A DNA stretch of 30,033 nucleotides from Macrostomum lignano. Its lineage: Eukaryota. The stretch's first letter is position 1, and the number at the start of each line of letters is the position of its first letter. Of this stretch, positions 11,071-30,033 are shown one piece after another. The stretch covers positions 1 to 30,033 of the forward strand of contig NIVC01004961.1 in the NCBI GenBank assembly GCA_002269645.1, read 5' to 3'. The translations under genes were made by a program, and so were the position numbers. The notes under the pieces were generated by a model. The model was not told the DNA's origin. It did not search any database and saw nothing but the letters and a program-made list of their open reading frames with translations.

Positions 11071-14000
11071 ATGCCTCCTACTAAAGAAACAGACGAATTA
11101 AAAGCAGCAGACCGGGCCGATGGCAGGTCGGATACCGCTGTCGCCGCCGCCTCAGCCGACGCATTGAATGTAACTAGCCGATGCAGCTCCAGCGTCACCT
11201 CAGCTAAGCCGTTGCTATTGGATACAGGCGCGTTCGGCGCTTTGCTAGCCTGCGGCTTTGACGAAGAGATTCGAATCTACAAACTGTCCGATGCGAGGCG
11301 GGCACAGCGCGGCGGCCAGGAGCCCAACGCTACCGCCTCCGCTGCCGGGTTTCTATGGCGCTGGCCGCGCTGGCAACGGCTGGCCGGCGTTCACCGGGCC
11401 GCCGTGCGCGACATTCAAGCGTCGCCAAACAGCGAAGTGCAGCTAGTCAGCTGCGGCATGGACGGCAGACTGGCTGTGTGGAATTATCCTACTGGCCAGG
11501 CCGTGTCCGTGATTGAGCTGGGCTGCCCTATTCTGCGCGTGCTGCCGCTGCTGTCTGCCGACCTCTCCGATGCTGATAATGACGCTCCCGCTTACTATTG
11601 CCTGTTGCCTAGCAACCGTCAGGGCAAGCAGGAGTACCGAGTGACGGCACTCAACAGCCAGGCTTTGAAGCAGAACAAGCCCGGGATGAAATTGATGGGC
11701 CGAGTGCTGCCCGACTGTCTATCGCTTGGCCAGAACGGCCGGTTCCTCGTGTCCGCCAATCGTGGCAATCTGCTAGTTTATCGGCCGTCTCGCCAACGCG
11801 TGTACAGCCATTTCGCCTGCGACGGCGCCCGATGCCGGGTAGTGTCCGTGGCCGCCCATCCGAGCCAACGTTCGGCCGCGGTCGGCCTGTCGAACGGTCG
11901 AATCTTGATTATGCACGGCCTGTTCACCTCCGGCCGGCCAGTGTCCACTCTGTTGCAGTGGCATTTTCGGCCAGTGTCCGGCCTGACCTACGCGTCCGAC
12001 GGTTGCGCCCTGTACAGCGGCGGGGAGGAGGCCGTCCTGGTGAAATGGGACACCAGCCCGGAGGCCGGCGAAGCGACCGGCAATCGAGCTTTCCTACCCC
12101 GCCTCGGCGCTAGAATTGTTGGCGCCGTCTGCGGACCGACCGGCCAGGCGGCTGCGGCGGCGGTCCTATCGGACAACAGCGTGCTTGTGCTAGACTCCAA
12201 TATGGGATTAGTCGGCGGGCTCAACGGCGGCGTGCTAGTCGGCGCAGACGATGACGGAGCTCCTGACGAGCAGCAGCAGCAGCAGCAGCTCGGCCTGCTG
12301 CGCGACCCGCTAACCGAGTGCGTTGCCATGCCAGGCCAAGCTGGCGTAGTTCAATTCTACTCTGTGTCCGAGCAGCGCCACCTCGGCTGTCTGGACGTGG
12401 CTAAGGCCAATTATACTGCGGTAGAATCGGCTGTGGTTTCCAAGGTAACGCCGGCCAGAGTTGAAGCGGCCGCGTTCTCCGACGCCGGCGCTTGGTTAGC
12501 AACGTTCGACCGGCGGGATGACGGGCGATACCCGCCGGAGCTGCGGCTTCGGCTGTGGCTGCGGCAGTGCCACCGGCCGCTGGTAAAATCCGAGGTCGGG
12601 GACGTCGACGGCGAGACCGACGCTCTCTTTGAGCGGCTGGCATTCAGCCAGTGCGGCGAAGAGCGACTCGCTCATTGCATTGTCGGCATGGCGTTTCAAC
12701 CGTGCGCAGGCGAGCGCAAGCTCGTTTGCTCGTTAAGCGACGGCAGCCTGGTGTGCTGGACTCGCCAGGAGCGGGTGCGGCATCTGGCCGAGCCTGGCCG
12801 ACACACCGACTTCGCCTCGTTCTGGACGGTGCGTGGCATCTCGGGATTGTGGGTCATGGAGTTTCAAAAGTCATGGTTAGTGGGACATGAACCTCCAATG
12901 GTCATAGTTAGTGGGTCATGGACCTTCGATGGTCATAGTTGGTCATGGAGATCTGATAGTCGTAGTTTGTAGATTATGAAATTACGAGTATAATTGATAT
13001 TGGCCGTGAAGTTTTTTATAATAGCAGATTGCTAGATCAACAAAACGTTTTTCGAAAGCATTGGGTTATTTTATTAGCTCGTATAGGGTAATGAATTTAT
13101 AATTGTGACTGATAGTGCTATCTACTTGTAATGAGTTGTGGTTATTATGCTATCCTACTTAAATGCTTAAATGCATTCCAGATAACTCGCACCTGGCGCC
13201 TGGGCCACGGTTTCACCGGCGGCCCATTAGCATTTGATCCTACCGGCCGCTACCTGCTCACCTGTCACCAATCGCAGGCCTGCGCAGCCGTTTGGAGCAC
13301 CTGCAATCTCGCCAGACCGCCGGCTTTGTTCCGCCTGTTCGATGGCGCCGCACAGACGGCCGGCAGTCAGCTGCTAGCATTCTGCTCGATGTGGGACAGC
13401 GGCCAATCGGTTGTCGTCTGCGGCCGGGACAGGCTGAGAGTTTGGGACCAGCAGAGTGGTCGCCGGCTAGCCGAGGCTCGCCTGACAGTGACATCGGCGG
13501 CCGAGGATCACAAGTCCGGCATGCTGATTCTGCTGTGCGCCGCTGAACAGGCCCTGCTAATGCTGCACAGCTGCGAGCCTGGCCAGCTCAGCCGGATTCG
13601 ACTCAACTGCCCCTCGGAGCCTGTCAATCTCTGCGTGACCGAGGACACGTTCGTGTTTATGACTCGCGATCGTCGACTGTTTGTATATCCCGAGCCTGCG
13701 GCGGCTGCCGTTGCGGCTTCGGTCGAAAACGAGGCGACAACGGCAGCGGCTGCGACTAAGGCGGAGCTGGAAGCCGAATCGGCCGCGGCGGCCTCGTTGC
13801 TAGGCAGGGTGTTCGGCCGGCGTCAGGCCGGCCTGCTAGGCGGCGCGCAGCTGGCCGATCCGGGCGCCGCTTTGGAGGCTCGCCTGCGCCTGTTCACCGA
13901 GTCGGACGCGTTCGCGGCGCCCAGTTTGGCGCGATTCATAGCCGGCAATCTGGAGCTGGTGCGGCGCCGCCTGCTGGCTGAGGACGGCCTGACTGGGGAG

Positions 14001-15846: not shown

Positions 15847-18800
15847 ATGAGAGTGCCAGCCGTGCAGCACAGTGGACAGCCAGTTGCTGGTCAGAGATCG
15901 GATGTTCAATGCATATTTTATTGCATATTCCATCACGAGGCTGGGCCCAAAATCGAGGTGCAAGAGCCGGCGATTTCATAGTGAAGGAAAGCTTTGACAA
16001 GGTCAGCCGCTATCTGATTACTAAGACGGATTTTGACAATCGATTCATCTGGTTAGACGCGTTTGGATCCCGGATTATGGGCTGTGCTCAGTGCATCGAG
16101 GATAAGCGGTATAAACGGAACGCTATGCACTTTAACATCGGCCTGGTTATCAGTATGGACTGTCAGGTTGGAATCTGCACTATTGCTATGCCTTTTGTCT
16201 TTTGGTTTGAAAAGTTCTGTTTGGACCACTGATACTAGAATAACCAGATAATTAAATTTGTGAAAAAATCGGAGCATCTACTTTTTCAGTAGTTTGTGCG
16301 CAGTGTCATTTCAAAATTAAATTTGGCAACTAAAATTTCCTTTCCTTCTTTGGAAGCATATGTGATTAATAAATGAACAACAGACATTTAACTCCATGTA
16401 CACAAGTGAACGCAACACAAACGAAACTCATCCTAAGGGGCAGGCCCAATCTAGCTCAGCCAATGAGAGAGCAGTAAAAAGAGAGATCAAAGTCAGACAG
16501 ACGTAACTCAGCGTGGGGGGCAGGCTTAATCTAGCTCAGCCAATGAGAGAGCAGTAAGGAGAGAGACCAAAGTCAGACAGACGTAACTCAGCGTGGGGGG
16601 CAGGCTTAATCTAGCTCAGCCAATGAGAGAGCAGTAAGGAGAGAGACCAAAGTCAGACGCAAGCAGGCAGGATGATTTTTCAACGAGCCAACGGTTACCC
16701 CTACAAATACAAAAAAAGTTAAATTAAGAGACCTCCTACTAACAAAAGTAACAAAAATAATTAAAATTGAATCTCTTGTGCGTGCACAAATGGTTTCTAA
16801 TACAAGAGAGGGCTCGGGGATCGGCAACTCCGCTATCTATCCGACCCTCTGGTCCATTGAAACTTCGTGGTAATAGCAATCCGTTAGGGTTTATGCCGAT
16901 TCTACTGTCAACTCTCCACTCACGACTTCACTCTTATCTACTTTCCTTTCTTGTCTTCCTTCTCATTTCTTCTCTGATCTGGGCCGCATCCTTGTGATGG
17001 ATTCCTTATCTGGCCCGTTTATCGACCCCTGGTCTAGCTGAAGTTGCTACTATTAGCAGTATGTTAAACCCTTTTTGTTCACCCGTAGGTGCCAGTCAAA
17101 TACGAGCTGATTGTGAGAAAGCTTGGCCGCTACTTTCACAGCCTGGAGGTTGAGACCGCATTCCTATCCGACCCGGACGCCCAGACCAAACTGCTTCCTG
17201 TACTGACCAGCATTCGAGCCAGTCTTAACGGGCCCGGCTCCTGCAAGCTGCAGGTGTTGCCAGGCAGATCTTTGGAGCTCTTTCTGAAACCGGCCGCGCC
17301 TTTAGAGGCCGCCGCAATGCCGCAGGATTTTGAGGTTTGTTTATCTGCCTTGCTGATCGATTGCTACTTATTTAAATGCCATATTAATACTGTTTACCAA
17401 CTACTGGTCCCTGTGTGTCACTAATTATCTAGTACTGTTCTCTTAAATGTCAACTACTGTGACGAATTGATTGCACCAATGTCTGCTTCCTGAAGCTGTC
17501 ACCAGCATCTGACACTATCATCTGTCACCAGCATCTATCACCATCATCTGTCACCAGCATCTATCACCATCATCTGTCACCATCATCTGTCACCAGCATC
17601 TGTCACCATCATCTGTCACCAGCATCTGTCACCATAACAACAACAACAACAGAGTACGCTGCCAGATCACAAAAGCAGCGTCAGATGGCGCGCTTCAAAG
17701 CTTGGGCGCGAACAAAAGCCGCACCGCCGGCAGAGTCCGGGGCGCCGGCGTCAGCCAGCAGACAGTCGACGTAGCGCCGAGTCCTCGCCTGTCCCCGCCG
17801 GTAGGGTGCCTGCAACGTAAGTAGCAGCACCTCCTGCACCGGCTCCGGGCAGTAGGCCTCGGCGCGGATGACGTGGCCTGCCAGCTGGAGTCGCCGACGG
17901 CGCAGCAGATCGCTAGGACGGGCCAGGCCGGCGCGATGATAGAGCGCCGTGTTGGTGACTCGCTCGTTGCCGATCTTGAAGGCGGCGCGCAGCAGGCCAG
18001 CGTGCGCCGCGTCGACTTGAGCCTCGAGCGAGTCTGTCAGCGTCCAGTTCTCGGCGTTGTATAACAGGACGGTCTCGATCACCGCCTGGAACAGCGCCGC
18101 CCTCTGGCGGTCCGGTAGGGCCTCGGACTGCAGGACTGACCTTATAGAACGAAAGGCAGCCCAAGCAAGTCCTCGGCGACGCCGCAGATCCTCGCGGACG
18201 TCGGGAACCAGACCGCCGAGGTAGACGAACTGCTGACATCTTGGAAGCTCACTCGCCTGTCCGTCAGCGCCTCGGCAGAAGATTGCAGCCTCGGTGTCGT
18301 CCGGCACGCATAGCACGACGGTCTTCTGCGTGTTGACCACCAGGCCGACGCTCGCCGCAACGGCAACCAGCCTATCCAGCTGTCGTTGGGCGCCCTCGAC
18401 GGTCGAGGACAGCAGGGCGAGGTCATCGGCGTAGCCAAGCACGCTGAGCCGTCTCTCCGGTTGGCGTCGACCCACGCGTCGCCGCAGCAGGAAGCCGTCG
18501 TCGTTGGAAGGCAGAGCAGTCCGTAGCACCCAGTCAAGCACCAGAATAAACGGCGCTAGCGTATCTCCCTGGAGCACCCCGGAGGATGTCTCGAAGAAAT
18601 CCGATAGGCCGTCTGGTGTTGAGACAGCAGCCGTCGTGCCGTGGTACAGCGCCATGACAGCAGAAATCAGCAGCTCTGGCACGTTGTACGCACGGAGCAC
18701 CTCTGGGAGCGCGTCCCTCACGACCGAGTCGAAAGCCTTCCTGAAATCGACGAAGATCAGGATCAGGGTCAACTGGCGGATGCGCGCCTCCTCGATGACT

Positions 18801-21788
18801 CGTCGAAGAGCCAGGATCTGCGTCACTGTGCCGCGATGGGGCCGGAATCCGTTCTGCTCAGGTCGCAGGTACGGGTCCAGCACAGGCTGTAACCGCGATA
18901 GCAGCATGCGGTTGAACAGCTTCGCGGCGCAGGACTCACCATCGTCGCCATCGACAGATCCCCGACAGATCCCGAGTCCCGACAGATCCCCGACAGATCA
19001 CCATCGACAGATGTCACCATCATCTGTCACCAGCATCTGTCATCAGCATCTGTCACCAGCATCTGTCACCAGCATCTGTCACCAGCATCTGTCACCATCA
19101 TCTGTCACCATCATCTGTCACCAGCATCTATCACCATCATCTGTCACCATCATCTGTCACCAGCATCTGTCACCATCATCTGTCACCAGCATCTGTCATC
19201 AGCATCTGTCACCATCATCTGTCACCAGCATCTGACACTATCATCTGTCACCATCATCTGTCAGTCACCATCATCTGTCACCAGCATCTGTCATCAGCAT
19301 CTGTCACTATCATCTGTCACCAGCATCTATCACCATCATCTGTCACCATCATCTGTCACCAGCATCTGTCACCATCATCTGTCACCAGCATCTGTCACCA
19401 TCATCTGTCACCAGCATCTGTCATCAGCATCTGTCACCAGCATCTGTCACCAGCATCTGTCACCATCATCTGTCACCATCATCTGTCACCAGCATCTATC
19501 ACCATCATCTGTCACCATCATCTGTCACCAGCATCTGTCACCAGCATCTGTCACCAGCATCTGTCACCATCATCTGTCACCAGCATCTGTCATCAGCATC
19601 TGTCACCATCATCTGTCACCAGCATCTGACACTATCATCTGTCACCATCATCTGTCAGTCACCATCATCTGTCACCAGCATCTGTCATCAGCATCTGTCA
19701 CTATCATCTGTCAACAGCATCTGTCACCAGCATCTGTCACCAACATCTGTCACCATCATCTGTCACCAGCATCTGTCATCAGCATCTGTCACCAACATCT
19801 GTCACCATCATCTGTCACCAGCATCTGTCATCAGCATCTGTCACTAGCATCTGTCACCAGCATCTGTCATCAGCATCTGTCACTATCATCTGTCAACAGC
19901 ATCTGTCACCAGCATCTGTCACCAACATCTGTCACCAGCATCTGTCACCATCATCTGTCACCATCATCTGTCACCAGCATCTGTCACCAGCATCTGTCAC
20001 CATCATCTGTCATCATCATCTGTCACCATCATTTGTCACCATCATCTGTCACTAGCATCTGTCACCAACATCTGCCACCAGCATCTGTCACCATCATCTG
20101 TCACCATCATCTGTCACCAGCATCTGTCACCATCATCTGTCACCAACATCTGCCACCAGCATCTGTCACCATCATCTGTCACCATCATCTGTCACCAGCA
20201 TCTGTCACCAGCATCTGTCACCAGCATCTGTCACCATCATCTGTCACCAGCATCTGTCACCATCATCTGTCACCAGCATCTGTCATCAGCATCTGTCACC
20301 AGCATCTGTCACCAGCATCTGTCACCATCATCTGTCACCATCATCTGTCACCAGATCTGTCATCTGTCACCATCATCTGTCAGTCACCATCATCTGTCAC
20401 CAGCATCTGTCACCATCATCTGTCAGTCACCATCATCTGTCACCAGCATCTGTCACCATCATCTGTCACCAGCATCTGTCACTATTATCTGTCACCATCA
20501 TCTGTCACCAGCATCTGTCACCATCATCTGTCACAGCATCTGTCACCAGCATCTGTCACTAGCATCTGTCACCAACATCTGCCACCAGCATCTGTCACCA
20601 TCATCTGTCACCAGCATCTGTCACCAGCATCTGTCACCATCATCTGTCACCAACATCTGCCACCAGCATCTGTCACCATCATCTGTCACCATCATCTGTC
20701 ATCATCATCTGTCACCAGCATCAAACATCAGCATCTGTCACCGATTCAATCCGGCAGGTGCCAGTTCTGGTTGGCCGGTCTCCGCCAGTCAAGACAGACA
20801 TTGTCACCAGCCTAATCCTGCCCTACATTGACGGAGTCTCGCACGTCGCTAAAATAGCCTGCATGGCCGACGTAGACAAGAGCATAGTGAAAACCTGCCT
20901 GCAGAATCTCTGCAGCCTGCACGCTGTCAGATTCCTGCCGCTGACCCTGTACTCTGACTCTTACGCCTGTCTGACCGGACTGCATAGGCTCGTGTCCGAT
21001 CCCAGACTGGGCCAGCTCTGCCAGGAAGCTGTCACACTGTCTAACAAGGTGATGCTCGCAATTCATCTGCGCTCTACACCCGGGTATCTAGAGATCTCCA
21101 GCGAATCATATCCCATCTCTATAGAATCCTATTTCATCTCTGTAGAATCCGTTTTCATCTCTATTGAATCTGATCCCATCTCTATAGAAACCGATCCCAT
21201 CTCTATAGAATAATATCCCATCTCTATAGAATCTGATCCCATCTCTATAGAATCTGATCGCATCTCTATAGAATCCTATCCATCTCTATAGAATCCCATC
21301 TTATCTCTATAGAATCTGCCCCTATCTCTTGAGAATCTGTCCCCTATCTCTAGAGAATCGATAGGCACATGTCTAGAGGATGTCTACTCATCCTCAATCG
21401 CCCACCACCCCGCTCCCGAACGCAGGAGCGAACGCCCAGCATCGGGCGGCTGTTCCGCTTATTCTCGTGCATGTCGCCGGGCTCCACTCTGAAAGACCTG
21501 CTGACCCTGCACAGCGGCCTGGCAGCGAATGTAGACGTGCTCAGATTAGTGCAGTTCGGCCTGCTGCACTGCCTAATCCGGCGGGTTAGCGCCTATCCGG
21601 TTCGGCTGCACTGGAGTCAAACCGGATCGGCTGACTGCTCTGTCGGGCTAAGAGGAACCGACCAGCTGAACCGGCTGCTAGACGGATACCGGTCTATGGA
21701 TGAGATCTGCGCCAGCACGGGACTGAGCCGGCAGATGGTTGAAGAACGACTAGAACGGGATTCACTTGTGGTGGTTATAAGACGTTGA
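15847..21788 (+). CDS. NPRL2: GATOR1 subunit NPRL2 (nitrogen permease regulator 2-like); 4 exons, 1-nt frame break in exon 1
   Basis: Exons 15847-16166, 17089-17334, 20758-21048, 21426-21788; all GT-AG, phase 0. Joined protein: VQCIFYCIFHHEAGPKIEVQEP/DFIVKESFDKVSRYLITK..IMGCAQCIEDKRYKRNAMHFNIGLV..YELIVRKLGRYFHSLEVE..DFE|VPVL..ILPYIDGVSHVAKI..RLVQFGLLHCLIRRVSAYPV..SMDEICASTGLS..ERLERD, colinear with NPRL2 from end to end. Confidence 0.93.
16441..16658 (+). repeat. 80-bp tandem repeat x~2.7 in NPRL2 intron 1
   Basis: CAGGCTTAATCTAGCTCAGCCAATGAGAGAGCAGTAA.. recurs at 16441, 16521 and 16601. Confidence 0.92.
17495..17635 (+). repeat. Left arm of 13-bp satellite CATCTGTCAC(CAG/CAT)
   Basis: About 10 units, same family as 19013-20742. 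Confidence 0.95.
17636..18937 (-). mobile_element. 5'-truncated non-LTR retrotransposon, RTE-clade-like, antisense in NPRL2 intron 2
   Basis: Uninterrupted frame 18937-17681 with RT motifs EQNGFRPHRGT, FVDFRKAFDSV, GVLQGDTLAP, GYADDLALL, FVYLG and the C-terminal RRRRLQLAGHVIR; 3' UTR stem-loop ACGCTGC-12nt-GCAGCGT (17656-17681); (GTT)5 tail at 17650-17636. Confidence 0.93.
19013..20742 (+). repeat. 13-bp satellite CATCTGTCAC(CAG/CAT), about 130 units
   Basis: Seen directly; ends about 15 nt before the NPRL2 exon 3 acceptor (20756-20757). Confidence 0.99.
21085..21375 (+). repeat. ~20-bp minisatellite with palindromic core TCTATAGA (CCCATCTCTATAGAATC..) in NPRL2 intron 3
   Basis: About 14 imperfect copies. 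Confidence 0.92.
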
Positions 21789-22445
21789 GTAGCTTTTATT
21801 GCATTGCTTGCCATTGATTTGATACATCTGCCAATAGCTGTTGGCGCAGTCAGGTTGTCTATGGTTAGAAGCATCAAGCTCGAAATGAGTAGCTATAGAC
21901 TGTAAATTCGATATGATGCAATCGTATATATTACTGACATAACTGCTGAGAGTAGCTGGTCGTAGAAATCTTGTGGTTAAAAAAATGTCTACGGCAAAGC
22001 CCACTATTTTTCGACAAAGATATACTACTAATTAAGTAGTTAATTTAGGCATTTTAATAAGAAATCGAGTTTCGATATCTCTATATTAAAATATATGCCT
22101 GTGGATCTCTGTTTGTGCATTGTTCTGCGGACTTCTGAGGAAGCTTTTAATGTTGCTTTTAATATTCAATGATGTACACTATAGTTTGACAGTAATTCGA
22201 TATAAGTCATCGATGATTTATTGTGTCTCTTAGTTTTATCTTATAAGAATTAACTTTGTACTCTTAAGTAAGCACTTGTACTGCACTGCGTGACGCAGTC
22301 AAATTAGATTACAGATAAAAAATATAACTGAAGTGTTCTCAATCTGCTCACTTGTGCTTTCAATTTGATGAACAAGCATTAATGTTAGTTGCCTTCTTTT
22401 TGTCTTGATTTTTGATATTTTTACATATTTTTATCATACTCGTAT

Positions 22446-23140
22446 TAGCCCAGATCAGCGCCTTTGCCCCCCCCCCACTAATGTACAAATATAGCCCTGA
22501 TCGGATCTAATTGGCTGGCGCCTCCCCCATCCCCACTAATGTATAATATAGCCCTGATCGGATCTAATTGGCTGGCGCCTCCCCCATCCCCACTAATGTA
22601 CAAATATAGCCCTGATCCTATTTAATTAGCTGGCGCCTCTGCCCCCCCACTAATGTACAAATATAGCCCTGATCGGATCTAATTGGCTGGCGCCTCCCCA
22701 TCCCCACTAATGTACAAATGTAGCCCTGATCCTATTTAATTAGCTGGCGCCTCTGCCCCCCCACTAATGTACAAATATAGCCCTGATCGGATCTAATTGG
22801 CTGGCGCCTCCCCATCCCCACTAATGTACAAATGTAGCCCTGATCCTATTTAATTAGCTGGCGCCTCTGCCCCCCCCACTAATGTACAAATATAGCCCTG
22901 ATCGGATCTAATTGGCTGGCGCCTCCCCCATCCCCACTAATGTATAAATATAGCCCTGATCCTATTTAATTAGCTGGCGCCCCTCCCCCACCCCCAGTAA
23001 TGTACTAAATACGAGTATAGCCCTGATCCAATTTAATATAGCTGGCGCCTCCCCCACCCCCACTAATGTACAAATATAGCCCTGATCGGATCTAATTGGC
23101 TGGCGCCTCCCCCATCCCCACTAATGCACATATATAGCCC
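22446..23140 (+). repeat. ~57-59-bp tandem repeat with two alternating variants, between NPRL2 and CISD3
   Basis: CCACTAATGTACAAATATAGCCCTGATC-(GGATCTAATTG or CTATTTAATTA)-GCTGGCGCCTC.., about 11-12 copies. Confidence 0.97.
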
Positions 23141-23222
23141 AAGTCTTCACTTTTTAGCTTAACTGTCAATGCTTGTAGCCTTTAGGTGCCCGCTTGATTA
23201 ACTGCTAATTCTATCCCAACAG

Positions 23223-23660
23223 TACAGCCTTGGTCGCCTCCTCCAACATGCTCGCCTTCAGGCCGACAATTCAAAGGAGCCGCCTTCGCCGGCAGTCCCT
23301 GCGCCTGCCTGTCCCACATTCGGGCCGTCCAACGTACGCGGCAGCAGCCTCCGGCCCGGCCAGTCGCTGCGCTGGTGCGCATGCGGCCTCAGCCAATCGC
23401 AGCCCTGGTGCGACGGGTCTCACAGGCGGGCGCCGCCAGGGTACAAGCCCTTAGCCTGGACTGTGCCTGATAAGCCGCAGGCTCTCTACCAGCTTTGCAA
23501 TTGCAAGTACACGAAGAGCCCACCGCTGTGCGACGGCAGTCATACCAATCTGCCTTGCCAACTGATGGCTAAACAGGCCGATTGCAAAGACAAATCTAAT
23601 CACGCACAAGATTTAACATTGTGCAGCAGTTGCGGCTGGTGTCCAAAGTTTCAGTTCTGA
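23223..23660 (+). CDS. CISD3: CDGSH iron-sulfur domain protein 3 (MiNT/Miner2-type, two CDGSH 2Fe-2S motifs); no in-frame ATG
   Basis: Frame open from the acceptor at 23221-23222: YSLGRLLQHARLQ..LRPGQSLRWCACGLSQSQPWCDGSH..QLCNCKYTKSPPLCDGSH..CGWCPKFQF*. Two tandem CDGSH motifs and no TM helix define the CISD3 class. First in-frame ATG (23565) lies after both motifs. Confidence 0.92.
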   Translation, partial: YSLGRLLQHARLQADNSKEPPSPAVPAPACPTFGPSNVRGSSLRPGQSLRWCACGLSQSQPWCDGSHRRAPPGYKPLAWTVPDKPQALYQLCNCKYTKSPPLCDGSHTNLPCQLMAKQADCKDKSNHAQDLTLCSSCGWCPKFQF

Positions 23661-23714
23661 TGCGTAGCGGTGTAGCAGTATTTTTGTCTCTGATTTGCAC
23701 AGAATAATGGAGTA

Positions 23715-24465
23715 GGGAGAGCAGAGAAAAGAGAGGGGAGCCGAGGGAAGAGAGGGAGCAGAGAGAAGAGAAGGGAGGCAGAGGAAAGAGAGGGGAGCGG
23801 AAGGAAGAGAAGGGAGGCAGAGGAAAGAGAGGGGAGCAGAGAGAAGAGAAGGGAGCAGAGGGAAGAGAGGGGAGCAGAGAGAAGAGAAGGGAGCAGAGGA
23901 AAGAGAAGGGAGGCAGAGGAAAGAGAGGGGAGCGGAAGGAAGAGAAGGGAGGCAGAGGAAAGAGAGGGGAGCAGAGAGAAGAGAAGGGAGCAGAGGGAAG
24001 AGAGGGGAGCAGAGAGAAGAGAGGGAGCAGAGAGAAGAGAAGGGAGCAGAGGAAAGAGAGGGGAGCAGAGGGAAGAGAGGGGAGCAGAGGGAAGAGAGGG
24101 AGCAGAGAGAAGAGAGGGGAGCAGAGAGAAGAGAAGGGAGCAGAGGGAAGAGAGGGAGCAGAGAGAAGAGAAGGGAGCAGAGGGAAGAGAGGGAGCAGAG
24201 AGAAGAGAGGGGAGCAGAGAGAAGAGAGGGGAGCAGAGGGAAGAGAGGGAGCAGAGAGAAGAGAGGGGAGCAGAGAGAAGAGAAGGGAGCAGAGGGAAGA
24301 GAGGGAGCAGAGAGAAGAGAAGGGAGCAGAGGGAAGAGAGGGAGCAGAGGAAGAGCAGAGAGGGAGCAGAGAGAAGAGAAGGGAGCAGAGGGAAGAGAGG
24401 GAGCAGAGGAAAGAGAGGGGAGCGGAAGGAAGAGAAGGGAGCAGAGGCAAGAGAGGGGAGCAGAT
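23715..24465 (+). repeat. Polypurine minisatellite (GGGAGCAGAGAGAAGAGA / GGGAGCAGAGGGAAGAGA variants)
   Basis: About 750 nt, almost T-free on the + strand; ~17-21-bp units. Confidence 0.97.
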
Positions 24466-24846
24466 GGTTCTGAAAGCCTGTGAAGCCCTGATCATAATCC
24501 CATTTAGCAATAACTCGAACGAGATCCAGATGTCCTAATCCAGAAAAGAGCAATTCAAATTTAATGCTGATTCAAATTCAGTACCTTTGCTATAATGAAA
24601 CGATTTTATGAGGTTTGTTTTCATTAATAATTCAATAAAATATGGTGCCTTTACACAGATTTGATTTACAATTGCTTATATCGAATTCAGACTTTAAGCC
24701 TCTTAATAATTTCTGATAGTTTGTTAGCGATTTATAACCTGGAACTTGATTTATGAGTAAGGCTAAAGTGTTAGTTACATGACTCATCAATGCGAGCATA
24801 TTTTAGTAACATTAGTGCACGTGCACTATGACACACCTGTCCATAG

Positions 24847-26253
24847 GCTACCGGATTAAGCGGCGGCATTGTCCGCCTGTCTCGCCGATCAGTTAACGCA
24901 GGCCAAAGCGTTTCCCGCGTGGCAATTCGTCTGCTATCGTCTGGCAGTCAGCAGCAACAACAACAGCAGGAGCAACAGCAGCAGTCTCGGCCGCCGCTTC
25001 ATCGCGACCAGAGCTCGCCCAGCTTCTTGGCCGAATTGCCAGCCTGGATTTGGCCAAGCTGACGCCGGAGACTCGGGCCCTGCTAGATCGGATCGTTCGA
25101 GTTGATCATGCTGGTGATTTAAACAGTTTGCTGCTTGTGTGTATTTGTGCAACTTTATCGATTCCTATAATGGTCGCAATCTGCAGTTCACAGTTATATT
25201 CCGCCATTTATTAATGCATTTATAACTATTGACATGATTAATTGAAACTAGATAAATCCGTCCCTACATGTAGTTTCAATAAATCCACCTCTGACTTAGA
25301 TAAATCCGCCCCTGTTTTAGATAAATCCGCCCCTGGTTTATATAAATCCGCCCCTGGTTTAGATAAACCTGCCTCTGGTTTAAATAAATCCGCCCCTGGT
25401 TTAGATAAACCTGCCCCTAGTTTAGATAAATCCGCCCCTGGTTTATATAAACCTGCCCCTAGTTTAGATAAATCCACCCCTGGTTTAAATAAAACTGCCT
25501 CTAGTTTAGATAAATCCGACCCTGGTTTGGATAAATCCGATCCTGGTTTAGATAAATCCGCCCATAGTTTAAATAAATTAGCCTCGATTCCCTGTAAATC
25601 CGCCCCTAGATTAAATAAATCTGCCCCTAGTTTGCATCAATCCGCCCCTGCTGTACATGTTCTCAGTTAAATCTCCCTCTAGTTCGAACAGATCCACCTG
25701 CACCCCAGAGAAACCCGCTACCAGTTCCGATAGATCTGCTCCTATTTCAGTTAAATCCGCCTCAACTTCCGCAGGCGAATTCGGCGCCGACCGGATCTAC
25801 GCCGGCCAGCTAGCTGTGCTGGGCGGCACCCCAACAGGCCCGCTGATCCGCCACATGCACGAGCAGGAGCAGGACCATCTGGCCGCGTTCGAAGCCCTCA
25901 TCCCGGCGTTGCGCGCCCGGCCCACCGTGCTGATGCCGTTCTGGCGTGTGGCCGGCTTCGCTTTGGGCGCCGGCACCGCTTTAATTGGCAAAGAGGCCGC
26001 CATGGCCTGCACTGTGGCTGTTGAAGCCGAGATTCAGGAACACTACAATGCTCAGCTGCGCAGCCTGCTAGCCGATAATCCCGAGCTACACGCCGACTTA
26101 ATGCGGGTCATCGCTCGATTCCGCGACGAGGAGGCCGAGCATCACGACACTGGACTACGCGAGGACGCTGAGTCTGCGCCCGCTTATCCGGCTTTGTCCG
26201 CCGCCATTCGAGCTGGCTGTCGGGTTGCCATCTTCTTGTCGGAGCGGATCTGA
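24847..26253 (+). CDS. COQ7: 5-demethoxyubiquinone hydroxylase COQ7/CLK-1; 2 exons, 5' end uncertain (24847 or 24948), no ATG
   Basis: Exon ending LLDRIVRVDHA-G at 25113 (GT 25114, phase 1) joins exon 25775-26253 to give HAGEFGADRIYAGQLAVLG..HMHEQEQDHL..RPTVLMPFWRVAGFALGAGTALIGKEAAMACTVAVEAEIQEHYNAQLR..FRDEEAEHHDTG..AIFLSERI*, with the COQ7 di-iron E/H ligands. Confidence 0.95.
25250..25740 (+). repeat. 21-bp minisatellite (TTAGATAAATCCGCCCCTGGT) filling the COQ7 intron
   Basis: About 19 close copies, then decay toward the acceptor; explains the LDKSAP ORF. Confidence 0.95.
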
Positions 26254-26263
26254 ACTAATTCAC

Positions 26264-26269
26264 AATAAA
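26264..26269 (+). promoter_or_regulatory. Candidate polyadenylation signal for COQ7
   Basis: AATAAA (in AATAAATAAA) about 10 nt after the stop codon. Confidence 0.55.
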
Positions 26270-26934
26270 TAAATTCGCAAAAGATATTGGTAAATAGCCT
26301 TAGAACGATAAAATGCCATAGAAATGCCGGGGAAATTCCATGGAAATGCCGAGGGAATTCCAGAAATTCCAAAAATATCCGCAGAAATTCCAAGAAAATT
26401 GATTTTTTCAAAACCCCACAGATATGCCATTAAAAATCACACGTTTCGTTTACCCAGTTACATGTTGTAGAGAAAGAGTTGTAGTCCAGTGGGTTCGGAG
26501 TCGAACGGTCTAAATTTGCTCCTTGAATATTTGAATCCTTGAATATTTGGCTATATTTTGTTAACTTACAAGTAGGTATTCCTGTGTAAGCAAACTGACC
26601 CACAATAATGAAACCTTTGCTTAGCTTAAACTTAGTTCAAACCGGAAAGTCACCCAGTGCTTTTTATTTGAATTTCTATCTGACTGTTAACCATCTGCTT
26701 TTCTTCGAAGCATTTTGAACAGTTTTGAAATTGTACTTCATTTTCAATAGCTTTGTTATCAGGCTTGTCATAGCCTGATGCTTAAATATACAAATATTAA
26801 TCTGCAAAGGAGTTGTTTATTAAATCGTATTTTTCATTTTCAATTTTGTATCAACAAGAAATAATCTGTCAACATCTAGAATGACGCTCAAACTCCCTCT
26901 AGAATCTCATTCAATCGCCTTAATAGAGAATAGC

Positions 26935-27500
26935 CCTCAATGTCCTTTGATAATCGCCCTCGATCTCCTTTGATAATCGCCCTCAATCTTCATTGATAAT
27001 CGCCCTTAATCTCCATTGATTAATCGCCCTCAATCTCCATTGATTAATCGCTCTCAATCTCCATTGATAATCGCCCTCAATCTCCATTGATAATCGCCCT
27101 CAATCTCCATTGATAATCGCCCTCAATCTCCATTGATAATCGCCCTCAATCTCCATTGATAATCGCCCTCAATCTCCATTGATAATCGCCCTCAATCTCC
27201 ATTGATAATCGCCCTCAATCTCCATTGATAATCGCCCTCAATCTCCATTGATAATCGCCCTCAATCTCCATTGATAATCGCCCTCAATCTCCATTGATAA
27301 TCGCCCTCAATCTCCATTGAGAATCGCCCTCAATCTCCATTGATAATCGCCCTCAATCTCCATTGATAATCGCCCTCAATCTCCATTGATAATCGCCCTC
27401 AATCTCCATTGATAATCGCCCTCGATCTCCATTGATAATCGCCCTCAATCTCCATTGAGAATCGCCCTCGATCTCCATTGATAATTCCCCTGGATCTCCT
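26935..27500 (+). repeat. 23-bp minisatellite AATCTCCATTGATAATCGCCCTC, about 24 copies
   Basis: Near-perfect core at 27060-27420 with degenerate edges; no spacers. Confidence 0.98.
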
Positions 27501-27548
27501 TTGAAACAGCAAAACATAAGTAAATATTCCAGCAGTTTCAGCAGTTGA

Positions 27549-28458
27549 ATGCGGTGCACCAGACAGATCAGCAGCGGCTGTGTGGCCGAACTTGTCAGCG
27601 GTCTGGCTAACTCGGACATCATTCGCAAAGAGAAGCACATTCTTGTTGGGTACGCAATAAAAATCTAACAGTTATATAAAATGTCAAGTTTCTATCCCCG
27701 CTTGCTAGCTAATGCGATGATCATTGCAGACGGTTAAAACAATTCCCAGCAGCTGAGGTTCAGTCGCACTGCCAACAGTTGCTATGCAGCAATGCGAGCT
27801 TAGAGACGCTCGTGTCCGCGTTCGAGTACCTGTTGCAAGGAAATTTCGGTCAGTACTATTAATTAGTATTGCTTATATGGCTAGCCCATCCTGTGCTTGG
27901 TCACAAAGAAAATTAGCATACTGACCACAATGACAGATATGGAGATATGGAGACGCTAAGAAAGGCTTGAACTTTGATATCCCAGCAACTCTCCGTTAAT
28001 CCTCACTGTCATCATCTCGGCATCGGGTGTGGAGCCCTTTGGATTGGGGCGGAGCAGCTCCGCGGTTCCCCTGGTTCGATTCCACGCCCATTTACACCCA
28101 TGAATGCCAGCCCCCATGGCGCAGAGTACATACCCAGATAAATGCTGGCACCCATTTTTATAGCTGGGTGAACTAAAGCAACCAGAGTTACCATGGTAAG
28201 TGTCTTGCTCAAGGACACAAATAGTTCCAGTGGGATCGGGAATTGAACCCCCGACCTTCAAGTCGTGAGTCTGCAACTGCAACCCCATGTAAACAGTATA
28301 TAAGTATTTGTGGAGTCTTAGCATTCTTCATTGGGTTGTACTAACTGGAGACAGCCCGTATCCATTATCATCGACACTTAAATATCGTTGTTTTTAGGCT
28401 TGCCCGATACTTTCTGTCACAAACTGCTGGATAAAACTGTAATAGACATTTCTCATAG
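27549..28458 (+). CDS. Unidentified protein-coding gene, first three exons (continues beyond the window)
   Basis: Exons 27549-27649 (GTACGC, phase 2), 27730-27848 (tgcag| ..|GTCAGT, phase 1), 28398-28458 (tttttag| ..|GTAAGT, phase 2) splice into one open frame: MRCTRQISSGCVAELVSGLANSDIIRKEKHILVGRLKQFPAAEVQSHCQQLLCSNASLETLVSAFEYLLQGNFGLPDTFCHKLLDKTVIDISH. Confidence 0.7.
27950..28300 (-). mobile_element. tRNA-derived SINE, antisense in intron 2 of the unidentified gene
   Basis: Minus strand B-box GGTTCAATTCC (28249-28239), then GTGTCCTTGAGCAAGACACTT and GTTCACCCAGCTATAAAAATGGGTGCC, resembling conserved central domains of widespread metazoan SINE superfamilies. Ends approximate. Confidence 0.7.
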
Positions 28459-28544
28459 GTAAGTTCATAAAAATCTTATTTTGTATATATTAAAGCTTGT
28501 AAAAGGGTAGAAAATGGTTAATAGGGAATAAATAAGGAATAATA

Positions 28545-30033
28545 GGGAAGAAGGGGAAGCAGAGGGAAGAAAGGGAATCAGAAGGAAGAAAGAGGATCAG
28601 AAGGAAGAAAGGGGATCAGAAGGAAGAAAGAGGATCAGAAGGAAGAAAGAGGATCAGAAGGAAGAAAGGGGATCAGAAGAAAGAAAGGGGATCAAGAGAA
28701 GAAAGGGGATCAAAGGGAAGAACGGGGATCAGAAGGAAGAACGGGGATCAAAGGGAAGAAAAGGGATCAAAGGGAAGAAAGGGGATCAAAGGGAAGAAAG
28801 GGGATCAAAGAGAAAAAAGTGGATCAAAGGGAAGAACGGGGATCAGAAGGAAGAAGGGGGGATCAAAGGGAAGAAAAGGGATCAAAGGGAAGAAAGGGAT
28901 CAAAGGAAGAAAGGGGATCAAAGGGAAGAAAGGGGATCAGAAGGAAGAAGGGGGATCAAAGGGATAAAAAGGAATCAAAAGAAAAAGAAAGGGGATCAAA
29001 GGGAAGAAAGGGGATCAAAGAGAAAAAAGTGGATCAAAGGGAAGAACGGGGATCAGAAGGAAGAAGGGGATCAAAGGGAAGAAAAGGGATCAAAGGAAAG
29101 AAAGGGGATCAGAAGGAAGAAAGGGGATCAGAAGGAGGAAAGGGGATCAGAAAGAAGAAGGGAGATCAAAGGAAAGAAAGGGGATCAAAAGAGAGGAAAG
29201 GGGATCAAAGGGAAATAACGGGGATCAGAAGGAAGAAGGGGGATCAAAGGGAAGAAAGGGATCAAAGAGAGGAAAGGGGATCAAAGGGAATAACGGGGAT
29301 CAGAAGGAAGAAGGGGATCAAAGGGAAGAAAGGGATCAAAGGGAAGAAAGGGGATCAAAGGGGAGAAAGGGAAGAAAAGGGATCAAAGGGAAGAAAGGGG
29401 ATCAGAAGGAAGAAGGGGGATCAAAGGGAAGAAAAGGGATCAAAGAGAAGAAGGGGATCAAAGGGATAACGGGGATCAGAAGGAAGAAGGGGGATCAAAG
29501 GAAGAAAAGGGATCAAAAGGGAAGAAAGGGGATCAAAGGGGAGAAAGGGAAGAAAAGGGATCAAAGGGAAGAAAGGGGATCAAAGGGGAGAAAGGGAAGA
29601 AAAGGGATCAAAGGGAAGAAAGGGGATCAAAGGGAAGAAAGGGGATCAAAGGGGAGAAAGGGAAGAAAAGGGATCAAAGGGAAGAAAGGGGATCAAAGGG
29701 GAGAAAGGGAAGAAAAGGGATCAAAGGAAGAAAGGGGATCAAAGGGAGAAAGGGAAGAAAGGGGATCAAAGGGGAGAAAGGGAAGAAAGGGGATCAAAGG
29801 GAGAAAGGGAAGAAAAGGGATCAAGGGAAGAAAGCGGATCAAAGGGAAGAAAGCGGATCAGAAGGAGGAAAGGGGATCAAAGGGAAGAAAGGGGATCAAA
29901 GGGAAGAAAAGGGATCAAAGGGAAGAGAAAAGGGATCAAAGGAAGAAAGGGGGATCAAAGGGAAGAAAGGGGATCAGAAGGAAGAAATGGGATCAGAGGG
30001 AAGAACGGAGGGGATTAGAAGGAAGAAAGCTTG
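28545..30033 (+). repeat. Purine-rich ~19-21-bp minisatellite GGGATCAAAGGGAAGAAAG, runs to the window end
   Basis: About 75 units; pyrimidines almost confined to the GATC core; lies in intron 3 of the unidentified gene. Confidence 0.98.

What the first reader, a model, noticed from the sequence alone, without database searches (positions are those of the whole stretch)
24828..25113. COQ7 also lacks a usable ATG; two acceptors would each place an SL AUG in phase
Seen: the catalytic frame has TAA at 24894-24896 (ATG 24828 ends there) and no ATG before IVRVDHAG; the other two frames also have no ATG running into the exon. Model A: acceptor TAG 24844-24846 gives M-ATGLSGGIVRLSRRSVNAGQSVSRVAIRLLSSGSQQQQQQQ.., a strong presequence look-alike, but needs one extra base before 25060 (e.g. 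GG at 25046-25047 to GGG, LPAW-DLAKLTPE). Model B: acceptor CAG 24945-24947 gives M-SAATTTAGATAAVS..LLDRIVRVDHAG with no indel but a weak presequence. Both need a donated AUG. Two adjacent mitochondrial genes sharing this feature is more striking than one. If both acceptors are used, alternative trans-splicing could give differently localised COQ7 isoforms (speculative; a nuclear CLK-1/COQ7 role has been proposed in worm and human).
Basis: partly seen in the sequence, partly recalled or inferred. Interest (0 to 1): 0.72.

Follow-up and report, generated by a model that had tools for sequence, protein, structure and literature searches.

The report
Flatworm COQ7 start supplied by spliced leader
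This is the COQ7 gene of the flatworm Macrostomum lignano, which has no start codon of its own and most likely borrows the AUG at the end of the trans-spliced leader, a known flatworm habit; the "two acceptors" puzzle comes from a one-base assembly error in this contig.

Summary
The window is a whole 30,033-bp contig of the Macrostomum lignano Mlig_3_7 assembly. The raw observation holds. No ATG in any frame runs into COQ7 exon 1, and the catalytic frame is closed by TAA at 24894-24896.

The frame problem is an artefact. Three other copies of the locus read GACCCAGAG where the window reads GACCAGAG, so one C is missing at 25008. Against one of those copies the window shows 0 substitutions and 36 indels over 11.2 kb. 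Of these, 33 are single bases, nearly all in homopolymer runs, which is the signature of long-read consensus error.

With the C restored, one open frame runs from TAG|GCT (24846|24847) to the donor at 25113. It still contains no ATG. The M. lignano spliced leader ends in ...TTGCATG. Spliced at 24847 it gives a 249-aa COQ7 with an arginine/serine-rich, acid-free N-terminus.

- **Model B** (24948) works only in the erroneous sequence, so the dual-isoform idea is unsupported.

Use of the leader's AUG as initiator is established in flatworms (Cheng et al. 2006). No RNA reads could be examined, so the junction itself is inferred. A cis-spliced ATGA|GTAAGG exon remains a minor rival. Interest is low.

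The parts
24465..24846 (+). AT-rich sequence upstream of COQ7 (GC 0.34). Presumed outron or intergenic spacer removed by trans-splicing. It contains only out-of-phase or non-consensus cis donors.
   Evidence: GC profile; ATG and donor enumeration
24753..24762 (+). ATGA|GTAAGG, the only consensus GT[A/G]AG donor upstream. It is the candidate first exon for the cis-spliced rival: in frame with acceptors 24892|24893 or 24901|24902 in the corrected sequence.
   Evidence: donor consensus from PMC8629364
24844..24846 (+). TAG, serving both as the in-frame upstream stop of the COQ7 ORF and as the proposed spliced-leader acceptor (CACACCTGTCCATAG|GCTACC).
   Evidence: It is the only AG upstream of the polyQ tract that gives a full ORF after the leader's ATG.
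24847..25113 (+). COQ7 exon 1 (GC 0.60). It encodes the presequence-like N-terminus, a polyQ tract and the start of the COQ7 domain (..RIVRVDHAG). It has no ATG and is read in one frame once the missing C is restored.
25007..25008 (+). CC run that is CCC in the three other copies. This one-base assembly deletion splits the ORF into two frames in this contig.
   Evidence: alignment A1; indel catalogue
24948..24986 (+). (CAG/CAA)n tract encoding polyQ. Read in the wrong frame it gives Model B's SAATTTAGATAAV. Its CAG codons are also in-frame AG dinucleotides.
25114..25774 (+). Intron 1 (donor G|GTGATT, acceptor CCGCAG|G), carrying a 21-nt minisatellite at 25279-25650.
   Evidence: Splicing reproduces VDHAGEFGADRIY of P0001.
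25775..26253 (+). COQ7 exon 2 through the stop codon TGA at 26251-26253. It carries most of the di-iron motif.
26264..26273 (+). Two overlapping AATAAA polyadenylation signals, 11-20 nt after the stop.
   Evidence: read directly from the sequence
23262..23660 (+). Neighbouring CDGSH iron-sulfur gene. Its annotated 5'-partial CDS starts exactly after the consensus acceptor CTTCAG| (23261|23262). It has no in-frame genomic ATG, and the leader's ATG is in phase.

Best explanation
The locus is the nuclear gene for mitochondrial 5-demethoxyubiquinone hydroxylase (COQ7) of Macrostomum lignano. Its coding sequence has no start codon in the genome.

Proposed mechanism:
- The pre-mRNA is trans-spliced at TAG|GCTACC (24846|24847) to the 35-nt M. 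lignano spliced leader, which ends ...TTGCATG.
- That terminal AUG then sits directly in frame and serves as initiator. The product is a 249-aa protein, MATGLSGGIVRLSRRSVNAGQSVSRVAIRLLSS-polyQ-...-COQ7 domain.
- The pre-mRNA may be its own transcript, or a polycistronic one with the upstream CDGSH gene.

The frame break inside exon 1 of this contig is a single-C deletion at 25008. It is a long-read consensus error in a redundant contig, not biology. It is the only reason a second acceptor (Model B) appeared to work.

Shown here: gene identity, absence of any ATG in four copies, the indel and its error-like character, and the phase of the acceptor.

Inferred: that the leader is actually joined at 24847, and that translation starts on its AUG.
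For: **Organism and gene**
- A 100%-identical protein is PAA65892.1 of M. lignano, and a cluster member sits on a 30,033-bp contig, the same length as the window.
- Pfam COQ7 E = 8e-67. The motif E-x6-Y-x22-E-x2-H-x48-E-x6-Y-x28-E-x2-H is intact at residues 92-213.

**No genomic start**
- There is no ATG in any frame from 24829 to 25107.
- The upstream region and exon are identical in four copies apart from the C run.
- All GenBank models of this gene are 5'-partial.

**The indel is an error**
- Three of four copies carry CCC.
- Window against L003 shows 0 substitutions and 36 indels over 11.2 kb, nearly all in homopolymer runs.
- L003 carries a reciprocal error that frameshifts its own COQ7 C-terminus.
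- The assembly is Canu on PacBio reads, polished with Pilon (PMC5730564).

**Phase of the acceptor**
- In the corrected sequence, 24847 is the only acceptor upstream of the polyQ tract that gives a full ORF after the leader's ATG (249 codons).
- The AG belongs to the in-frame stop TAG.
- GC jumps from 0.34 to 0.60 at about this point.

**Spliced leader**
- The M. lignano leader is CGGTCTCTTACTGCGAAGACTCAATTTATTGCATG, and about 30% of genes are trans-spliced (PMC8629364).
- All reported flatworm leaders end in ATG. Its use as initiator was shown by Cheng et al. 2006 (cited).

**Calibration from the neighbour**
- The CDGSH gene's annotated partial CDS starts at the first base after a consensus CTTCAG| acceptor and is in phase with the leader's ATG.

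**N-terminus**
- The first 40 residues hold 5 Arg, 8 Ser and no Asp, Glu or Lys. Hydrophobic moments reach 0.7-0.76.

**Operon geometry**
- The gene is on the same strand as CDGSH, 1186 nt downstream, of which 751 nt is one minisatellite. The repeat-adjusted distance of about 435 nt is below the 1-kb operon threshold of PMC8629364.
Against: - No RNA evidence was seen. No transcript-derived M. lignano COQ7 protein exists in the searched collections. No gene-level spliced-leader table was found in the papers held.
- The acceptor CCATAG|G does not match the commonest trans-acceptor motif [T/C]TNCAG, which about 44% of sites carry.
- The annotated CDS of the intact copies starts at IVRL (window 24868), 21 nt downstream of 24847, and not right after an AG. 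The published pipeline therefore apparently did not cut this gene at a spliced-leader peak at 24847. I explain this by coverage-limited 5' ends, since reads were mapped end-to-end, but that is inference.
- A consensus cis donor directly after an ATG (ATGA|GTAAGG, 24753-24762) is in frame with two downstream acceptors.
Confidence: 0.68

Rival explanations
1. A short cis-spliced first exon supplies the start. A transcript starting upstream of 24753 splices ATGA|GTAAGG (donor at 24757) to GATCAG|TTAACG (24892|24893) or GCAG|GCCAAA (24901|24902). This gives MINAGQSVSRVAIRLL... or MSQSVSRVAIRLL... in frame with COQ7.
For: - It is the only GT[A/G]AG-type donor in the 380-nt upstream region.
- It directly follows an ATG.
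- It is in frame with two CAG acceptors in the corrected sequence.
- The CAG acceptors fit the cis consensus.
Against: - The RNA-seq-based GenBank models of all three intact copies include 24868-24901 (IVRLSRRSVNAG) as coding exon and are 5'-partial. They contain no ATG exon or junction.
- GC is already exon-like (0.55-0.58) from about 24830.
- This splice would discard the most arginine-rich part of the presequence.
Confidence: 0.12
2. A micro-intron model. ATG 24779 opens a 9-codon exon (MTHQCEHIL) that is spliced from TTA|GTAACA (24806) to the same TAG|G acceptor (24847) across a 41-nt intron.
For: It is in phase and open, and it uses the same acceptor as the trans-splicing model.
Against: - The donor GTAACA lacks the +5 G of the GT[A/G]AG consensus.
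- The intron would be only 41 nt.
- The annotated models are 5'-partial, without this exon.
- The exon would be AT-rich (GC 0.33-0.40), unlike coding sequence here.
Confidence: 0.04
3. The mRNA is not trans-spliced. It starts near 24847-24866, and translation begins at a near-cognate codon such as ATT 24868, CTG 24877 or GTG 24919.
For: The annotated 5' end lies at about 24866-24868 without a preceding AG. In-frame near-cognate codons are present.
Against: - Non-AUG initiation is rare and inefficient for a housekeeping enzyme.
- An AUG-terminated leader and an in-phase acceptor are both available.
- The neighbouring gene shows the leader-AUG pattern exactly.
Confidence: 0.05
4. Both 24847 and 24948 receive the leader, producing a presequence-bearing and a presequence-poor COQ7 with different localisation.
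For: In the window as written, the leader's ATG at 24948 gives a 215-codon ORF through the catalytic domain.
Against: - That ORF exists only because this contig lacks one C. In the three other copies the same acceptor gives 53 codons.
- The deletion has the signature of assembly error.
- The SAATTTAGATAAV peptide is the polyQ (CAG/CAA)n tract read out of frame.
Confidence: 0.03
5. The one-base deletion is real, and this contig carries a frameshifted, decaying duplicate of COQ7 in a recently duplicated genome.
For: M. lignano DV1 has duplicated chromosomes and many redundant gene copies (PMC5730564). Four copies of this locus are assembled.
Against: There are no substitutions against L003 across 11.2 kb, yet 36 indels. 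These are spread over coding and non-coding sequence in both directions. Real divergence would include substitutions.
Confidence: 0.07

Closest known systems
[quoted passage not shown]
   Same: - The organism is a flatworm whose spliced leader ends in AUG.
- The recipient ORF has no AUG of its own.
- The acceptor places the leader's AUG directly in frame.
- The host gene is a conserved housekeeping gene.
   Different: - The original demonstration was in Schistosoma mansoni, with cDNAs and reporter assays.
- Here the junction and the initiation are inferred from genome sequence and annotation only.
- I found no paper describing this usage for M. lignano genes specifically.
M. lignano SL trans-splicing and operons (Wudarski et al. 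2017, PMC5730564; Ustyantsev & Berezikov 2021, PMC8629364)
   Same: - It is the same genome assembly.
- The genes lie on the same strand as a run: NPRL2, CDGSH, COQ7, THADA.
- The repeat-adjusted spacing between CDGSH and COQ7 is about 435 nt, under their 1-kb operon threshold.
- Minisatellites inflate the spacers, as they describe.
   Different: - The acceptor is CCATAG|G, not their top motif [T/C]TNCAG.
- Whether this gene is flagged as trans-spliced in their annotation could not be checked.
COQ7/CLK-1 of other animals (e.g. human COQ7, 217 aa)
   Same: - The Pfam COQ7 domain is full length, with all six di-iron ligand positions.
- Identity to metazoan orthologues is 60-70%.
- The N-terminal extension is basic and free of acidic residues.
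   Different: - The pre-domain extension is longer (about 79 aa) and contains a polyQ tract.
- The start codon is not encoded in the gene.

Membership tests
mRNA that takes its initiator AUG from the flatworm spliced leader | The organism's spliced leader ends in AUG immediately before the donor site. | tested here: met
   The organism was identified as M. lignano. The published 35-nt leader ends ...TTGCATG (PMC8629364).
mRNA that takes its initiator AUG from the flatworm spliced leader | There is no in-frame genomic AUG between the upstream stop and the conserved domain. | tested here: met
   There is no ATG from 24829 to 25107 in any frame, and this is identical in four copies. The in-frame stop TAG lies at 24844-24846.
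mRNA that takes its initiator AUG from the flatworm spliced leader | A 3' splice acceptor places the leader's AUG in phase with the ORF. | tested here: met
   TAG|G at 24846|24847 gives a 249-codon ORF in the corrected sequence. The acceptor is not of the commonest motif.
mRNA that takes its initiator AUG from the flatworm spliced leader | cDNA or RNA-seq reads carry the leader joined at that acceptor. | not testable with these tools
   No M. lignano transcript data were reachable. No gene-level tables were found in the held supplements.
mRNA that takes its initiator AUG from the flatworm spliced leader | Translation actually initiates on the leader's AUG. | not testable with these tools
   This needs a reporter assay, ribosome profiling or N-terminal proteomics.
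COQ7 / 5-demethoxyubiquinone hydroxylase (PF03232) | Full-length match to the family profile above its curated threshold. | tested here: met
   224.5 bits against a cutoff of 23.5, covering profile positions 2-169 of 169.
COQ7 / 5-demethoxyubiquinone hydroxylase (PF03232) | The di-iron carboxylate motif E-x6-Y-x22-E-x2-H-x48-E-x6-Y-x28-E-x2-H is present. | tested here: met
   A regular-expression search matches residues 92-213. The motif definition comes from my own knowledge of the family.
Alternative trans-splicing giving dual-localised isoforms | Two acceptors each place the leader's AUG in the catalytic frame of the real gene. | tested here: not met
   The second acceptor (24948) is in frame only in the contig with the one-base deletion. 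In the three intact copies it yields 53 codons.
M. lignano operon (criteria of PMC8629364) | Adjacent same-strand genes have a repeat-adjusted spacing under 1 kb, with the downstream gene trans-spliced. | tested here: inconclusive
   The spacing criterion is met: 1186 nt minus a 751-nt minisatellite leaves about 435 nt. Trans-splicing of COQ7 and a polycistronic precursor were not observable.

The most novel reading that the evidence does not exclude
In the true (corrected) gene, every CAG codon of the polyQ tract (exon starts 24952-24985) is an AG acceptor that keeps the spliced leader's AUG in frame. Occasional trans-splicing there would make a COQ7 that begins M-polyQ and lacks the arginine-rich presequence. 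That would be a non-mitochondrial isoform produced by acceptor choice rather than by alternative promoters or AUGs. Nothing here shows that these sites are used.
Probability: 0.04. Interest if true: 0.5.

Novelty: new member of a known kind. Interest (0 to 1): 0.15.

Why it matters
The main value is practical.
- COQ7 and the neighbouring CDGSH gene are annotated in GenBank as "hypothetical protein, partial" because the leader-derived start codon is not in the genome. Adding the leader's AUG gives complete proteins.
- The result also warns that the small redundant contigs of Mlig_3_7 carry about one homopolymer indel per 300 bp, which creates false frameshifts. Two of the four COQ7 copies are broken this way.
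- Biologically, it adds two nuclear genes for (putative) mitochondrial proteins to the list of flatworm mRNAs whose translation depends on trans-splicing. The mechanism itself has been known since 2006.

Tried and rejected
- **Transcript-derived proteins.** I looked for proteins carrying the leader-encoded Met in the 5.8-billion-protein collection. Only three GenBank genome-annotation entries exist. No Logan or TSA sequence is present, and no other Macrostomum species appears.
- **Gene-level trans-splicing flags.** I searched for Mlig014096, Mlig004773 and Mlig006855 in the full-text library and in the supplements of PMC8629364, PMC5730564 and PMC5816591. Nothing was held.
- **Spliced-leader sequence nearby.** The full 35-nt leader has no exact match in the three related loci. 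In the window I searched only its last 16 nt, which gave just an SL-like 16-mer at 11058-11073. So no SL RNA gene was detected nearby.
GG at 25046-25047 is rejected, because all four copies are identical there.
It gives 54 codons in the corrected sequence and 68 as written, so it is rejected.
- **Cis ATG-exon combinations.** I enumerated every combination of ATG, GT donor and AG acceptor, which gave 128 in-frame combinations. Only two use a consensus donor, and these are kept as a rival.
- **Conservation among the four copies.** This cannot discriminate coding from non-coding sequence or locate the acceptor, because the copies are about 99-100% identical everywhere.
Full report
**What the window is**

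A search with the spliced COQ7 product found a 100%-identical protein, [quoted passage not shown]. Its 90% cluster has three members, all from GenBank assembly GCA_002269645.1 (Mlig_3_7). One of them, PAA46263.1 (181 aa, partial), lies on a contig of exactly 30,033 bp, the length of the window. The window is therefore a whole small contig of the M. lignano DV1 genome.

All genes lie on the + strand:
- WDR75-like, 11.0-14.6 kb.
- NPRL2, 15.9-21.8 kb, with a reverse-transcriptase ORF on the opposite strand in an intron.
- A CDGSH iron-sulfur gene, 23262-23660.
- COQ7, 24847-26253.
- A THADA-like gene starting at 27549.

Spacers and introns are full of minisatellites.

**Checking the observation**

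- TAA at 24894-24896 closes the catalytic frame, and ATG 24828 dies there after 22 codons.
- The only other ATG before the donor is at 25108, out of frame.
- None of the three frames has an ATG that runs into the exon.
- The 261 nt from 24847 to 25107 hold no ATG at all. Dinucleotide shuffles give a mean of 2.5, and 4.3% have none, so this is only mildly unusual.
- Exon 1 ends G|GTGATT at 25113, and exon 2 starts after CCGCAG| at 25775. Together they reproduce VDHAGEFGADRIY.
- The product is a bona fide COQ7: Pfam PF03232 E = 8e-67 with full profile coverage, and the complete di-iron motif.

**The frame problem is an assembly error**

The same locus is assembled three more times: L001 = NIVC01001608, L002 = NIVC01000579, L003 = NIVC01000580. 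Their annotated proteins read IVRLSRRSVNAGQSVSRVAIRLLSSGSQQQQQQQEQQQQSRPPLHRD-PELAQLLGRIASLDLAKLTPE...

The DNA alignment shows why. Exon 1 and 380 nt upstream are identical in all four copies, except that the window has GACCAGAG where the other three have GACCCAGAG.

Over 11,196 aligned columns, window and L003 have 0 substitutions and 36 indels. Of these, 33 are single bases. Nearly all are length differences of short homopolymer runs, they go in both directions, and they fall in coding and non-coding DNA alike. One of them, at window 26179, is a C missing from L003. That explains the frameshifted C-terminus of L003's own COQ7 model, P0121.

The assembly was made with Canu from PacBio reads and polished with Pilon (PMC5730564). 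Multi-copy regions are where such polishing fails. I conclude that the deletion at 25008 is a consensus error (about 0.9) and that the real gene has a single uninterrupted exon-1 frame.

**What is left after correction**

The corrected frame is open from the TAG at 24844-24846 to the donor, and it still contains no ATG in any of the four copies. I joined ATG, the last three bases of the spliced leader, to every AG acceptor between 24650 and 25010. The only site upstream of the polyQ tract that yields the whole protein is CACACCTGTCCATAG|GCTACC at 24846|24847, which gives 249 codons.

Model B's site (24948) gives 215 codons in the window as written but only 53 in the corrected sequence. Its peptide, SAATTTAGATAAV, is the (CAG/CAA)n polyQ tract read out of frame. 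So Model A is essentially right, and Model B and the dual-localisation idea are by-products of the error.

GC content steps from 0.34 upstream to 0.60 in exon 1, within about 20 nt of 24847. The predicted N-terminus, MATGLSGGIVRLSRRSVNAGQSVSRVAIRLLSS, has 5 Arg, 8 Ser and no acidic residue in its first 40 positions. Its helical hydrophobic moments reach 0.76. This looks like a mitochondrial presequence. No dedicated targeting predictor was available, so that reading is a judgement.

**Why the spliced leader is the best source of the AUG**
- M. lignano has a single 35-nt spliced leader, CGGTCTCTTACTGCGAAGACTCAATTTATTGCATG. It is added to about 30% of genes, and about 15% of genes lie in operons (PMC8629364; PMC12582326).
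- All reported flatworm leaders end in AUG. Cheng et al. (J Biol Chem 2006) showed that this AUG serves as initiator methionine. In S. mansoni it is in frame in 28% of trans-spliced transcripts and required by more than 40 cDNAs (as summarised in PMC9851317).
- The published annotation cut transcripts at mapped spliced-leader sites and then called ORFs with TransDecoder. A gene that depends on the leader's AUG should therefore appear as a 5'-partial CDS, and all four COQ7 models are partial.
- The neighbouring CDGSH gene gives a clean calibration. Its partial CDS starts at the first base after a consensus CTTCAG| acceptor (window 23261|23262). It has no in-frame genomic ATG before either CDGSH motif, and it is in phase with the leader's ATG.
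- COQ7 lies 1186 nt downstream of that gene on the same strand. Of that spacer, 751 nt is one minisatellite, leaving about 435 nt. That is under the 1-kb repeat-adjusted operon threshold of PMC8629364. COQ7 may therefore be a downstream operon gene, which would require trans-splicing.

**Weak points**

I could not see any RNA. The annotated CDS of the intact copies begins at IVRL (window 24868), 21 nt inside my proposed exon and not after an AG. The pipeline therefore did not place a spliced-leader cut at 24847.

My explanation is inference. Reads were mapped end-to-end, so leader-containing reads are lost and coverage ramps up from the junction, and the transcript assembler trims the low-coverage end. 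The window's own model supports the idea that these 5' ends follow mappability. It starts at DLAKLTPE (25047), about 39 nt past the indel, where reads would stop preferring the intact copies.

The acceptor CCATAG|G is also not of the commonest [T/C]TNCAG type.

**Rivals**

I enumerated every combination of ATG, GT donor and AG acceptor that keeps the corrected ORF open. This gave 128 combinations, of which only two use a consensus donor. Both start from ATGA|GTAAGG (24753-24762) and splice to 24893 or 24902, giving MINAGQSV... or MSQSVSRV....
- The cis-spliced ATGA exon is a real alternative (about 0.12). However, it would make 24868-24901 intronic, whereas the RNA-based models have it as coding exon and contain no ATG exon.
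- The 41-nt micro-intron from ATG 24779 uses a poor donor (GTAACA) and is likewise absent from the models.
- Non-AUG initiation on an untrans-spliced mRNA is possible but unnecessary.
- A real frameshift allele is unlikely, given zero substitutions.

**Comparison with what is known, and verdict**

Mechanistically this is the flatworm leader-AUG initiator of Cheng et al. 2006, in the species and assembly whose trans-splicing has already been surveyed. Of the five defining features:
- Three were tested and met: a leader ending in AUG, no genomic AUG, and an in-phase acceptor.
- Two need data I could not reach: leader-junction reads and initiation at that AUG.

The finding is thus a plausible new example of a known kind, plus a useful correction to the annotation. 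The only remnant of that idea is that the polyQ CAG codons are themselves in-frame AG acceptors, and there is no evidence that they are used. Interest is low.

Noticed in passing
window 11058-11073 (+): TTCAATTTTTTGCATG matches the last 16 nt of the M. lignano spliced leader at 14 of 16 positions and ends in the ATG that opens the WDR75-like ORF (ATG 11071). Matches with 2 or fewer mismatches are expected 0.03 times per window (3 of 100 shuffles). This could be chance, or a relic of a leader copied into the genome through a retro-transposed trans-spliced mRNA. The similarity does not extend further 5'.
   Followed up: partly
window 18864-30033 vs L003:1-11181: The window and contig NIVC01000580 are the same sequence assembled twice: 0 substitutions and 36 indels in 11.2 kb, about 1 per 300 bp, nearly all in homopolymer runs. 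Any frameshift seen in this contig should be distrusted until checked against the other copies.
   Followed up: yes
L003 (window equivalent 26179): L003 lacks a C that the window has. The proteins annotated on L001 and L002 (P0001) have the intact C-terminus, so they must carry it too. The missing C produces the aberrant COQ7 C-terminus of PAA80468.1 (P0121, ...AESAPLIRLCPPPFELAV...). It is the mirror image of the window's error.
   Followed up: yes
window 23262-23660 (+): A CDGSH iron-sulfur gene with two CDGSH motifs (CISD3/MiNT-like). It has no genomic ATG before the motifs. Its annotated partial CDS starts exactly after the consensus trans-acceptor CTTCAG|, in phase with the leader's ATG. 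Its N-terminus (M)ADNSKEPPSP... has acidic residues and does not look like a classical presequence.
   Followed up: partly
window 25047 (start of PAA46263.1): The GenBank model for this contig's COQ7 starts at DLAKLTPE, about 39 nt downstream of the indel, although the frame is open from 24897. This suggests that annotation 5' ends in redundant contigs follow read mappability rather than biology.
   Followed up: no
window 17681-18907 (-), flanked by 17496-17635 and 19012-20742: A 408-aa reverse-transcriptase ORF (RVT_1, E = 2e-20) lies antisense inside an NPRL2 intron. Next to it is a 1.7-kb array of a 13-nt repeat (TGTCACCAGCATC, about 132 copies). Another RVT_1 fragment lies at 844-1122 (-).
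   Followed up: no
window 27529-27551 (+): The THADA-like gene has its own ATG at 27549, seven nt after a consensus-type TTTCAG| acceptor. If the leader is added there, its AUG would be out of frame and would open a short overlapping upstream ORF. This is the opposite situation to COQ7 and CDGSH.
   Followed up: no
window 23714-24464, 25279-25650, 26929-27504, 28544-30005: Large minisatellite arrays (19-, 21-, 23- and 19-nt units) fill the CDGSH-COQ7 spacer, the COQ7 intron, the COQ7-THADA spacer and the contig end. They inflate otherwise short, operon-like distances.
   Followed up: no
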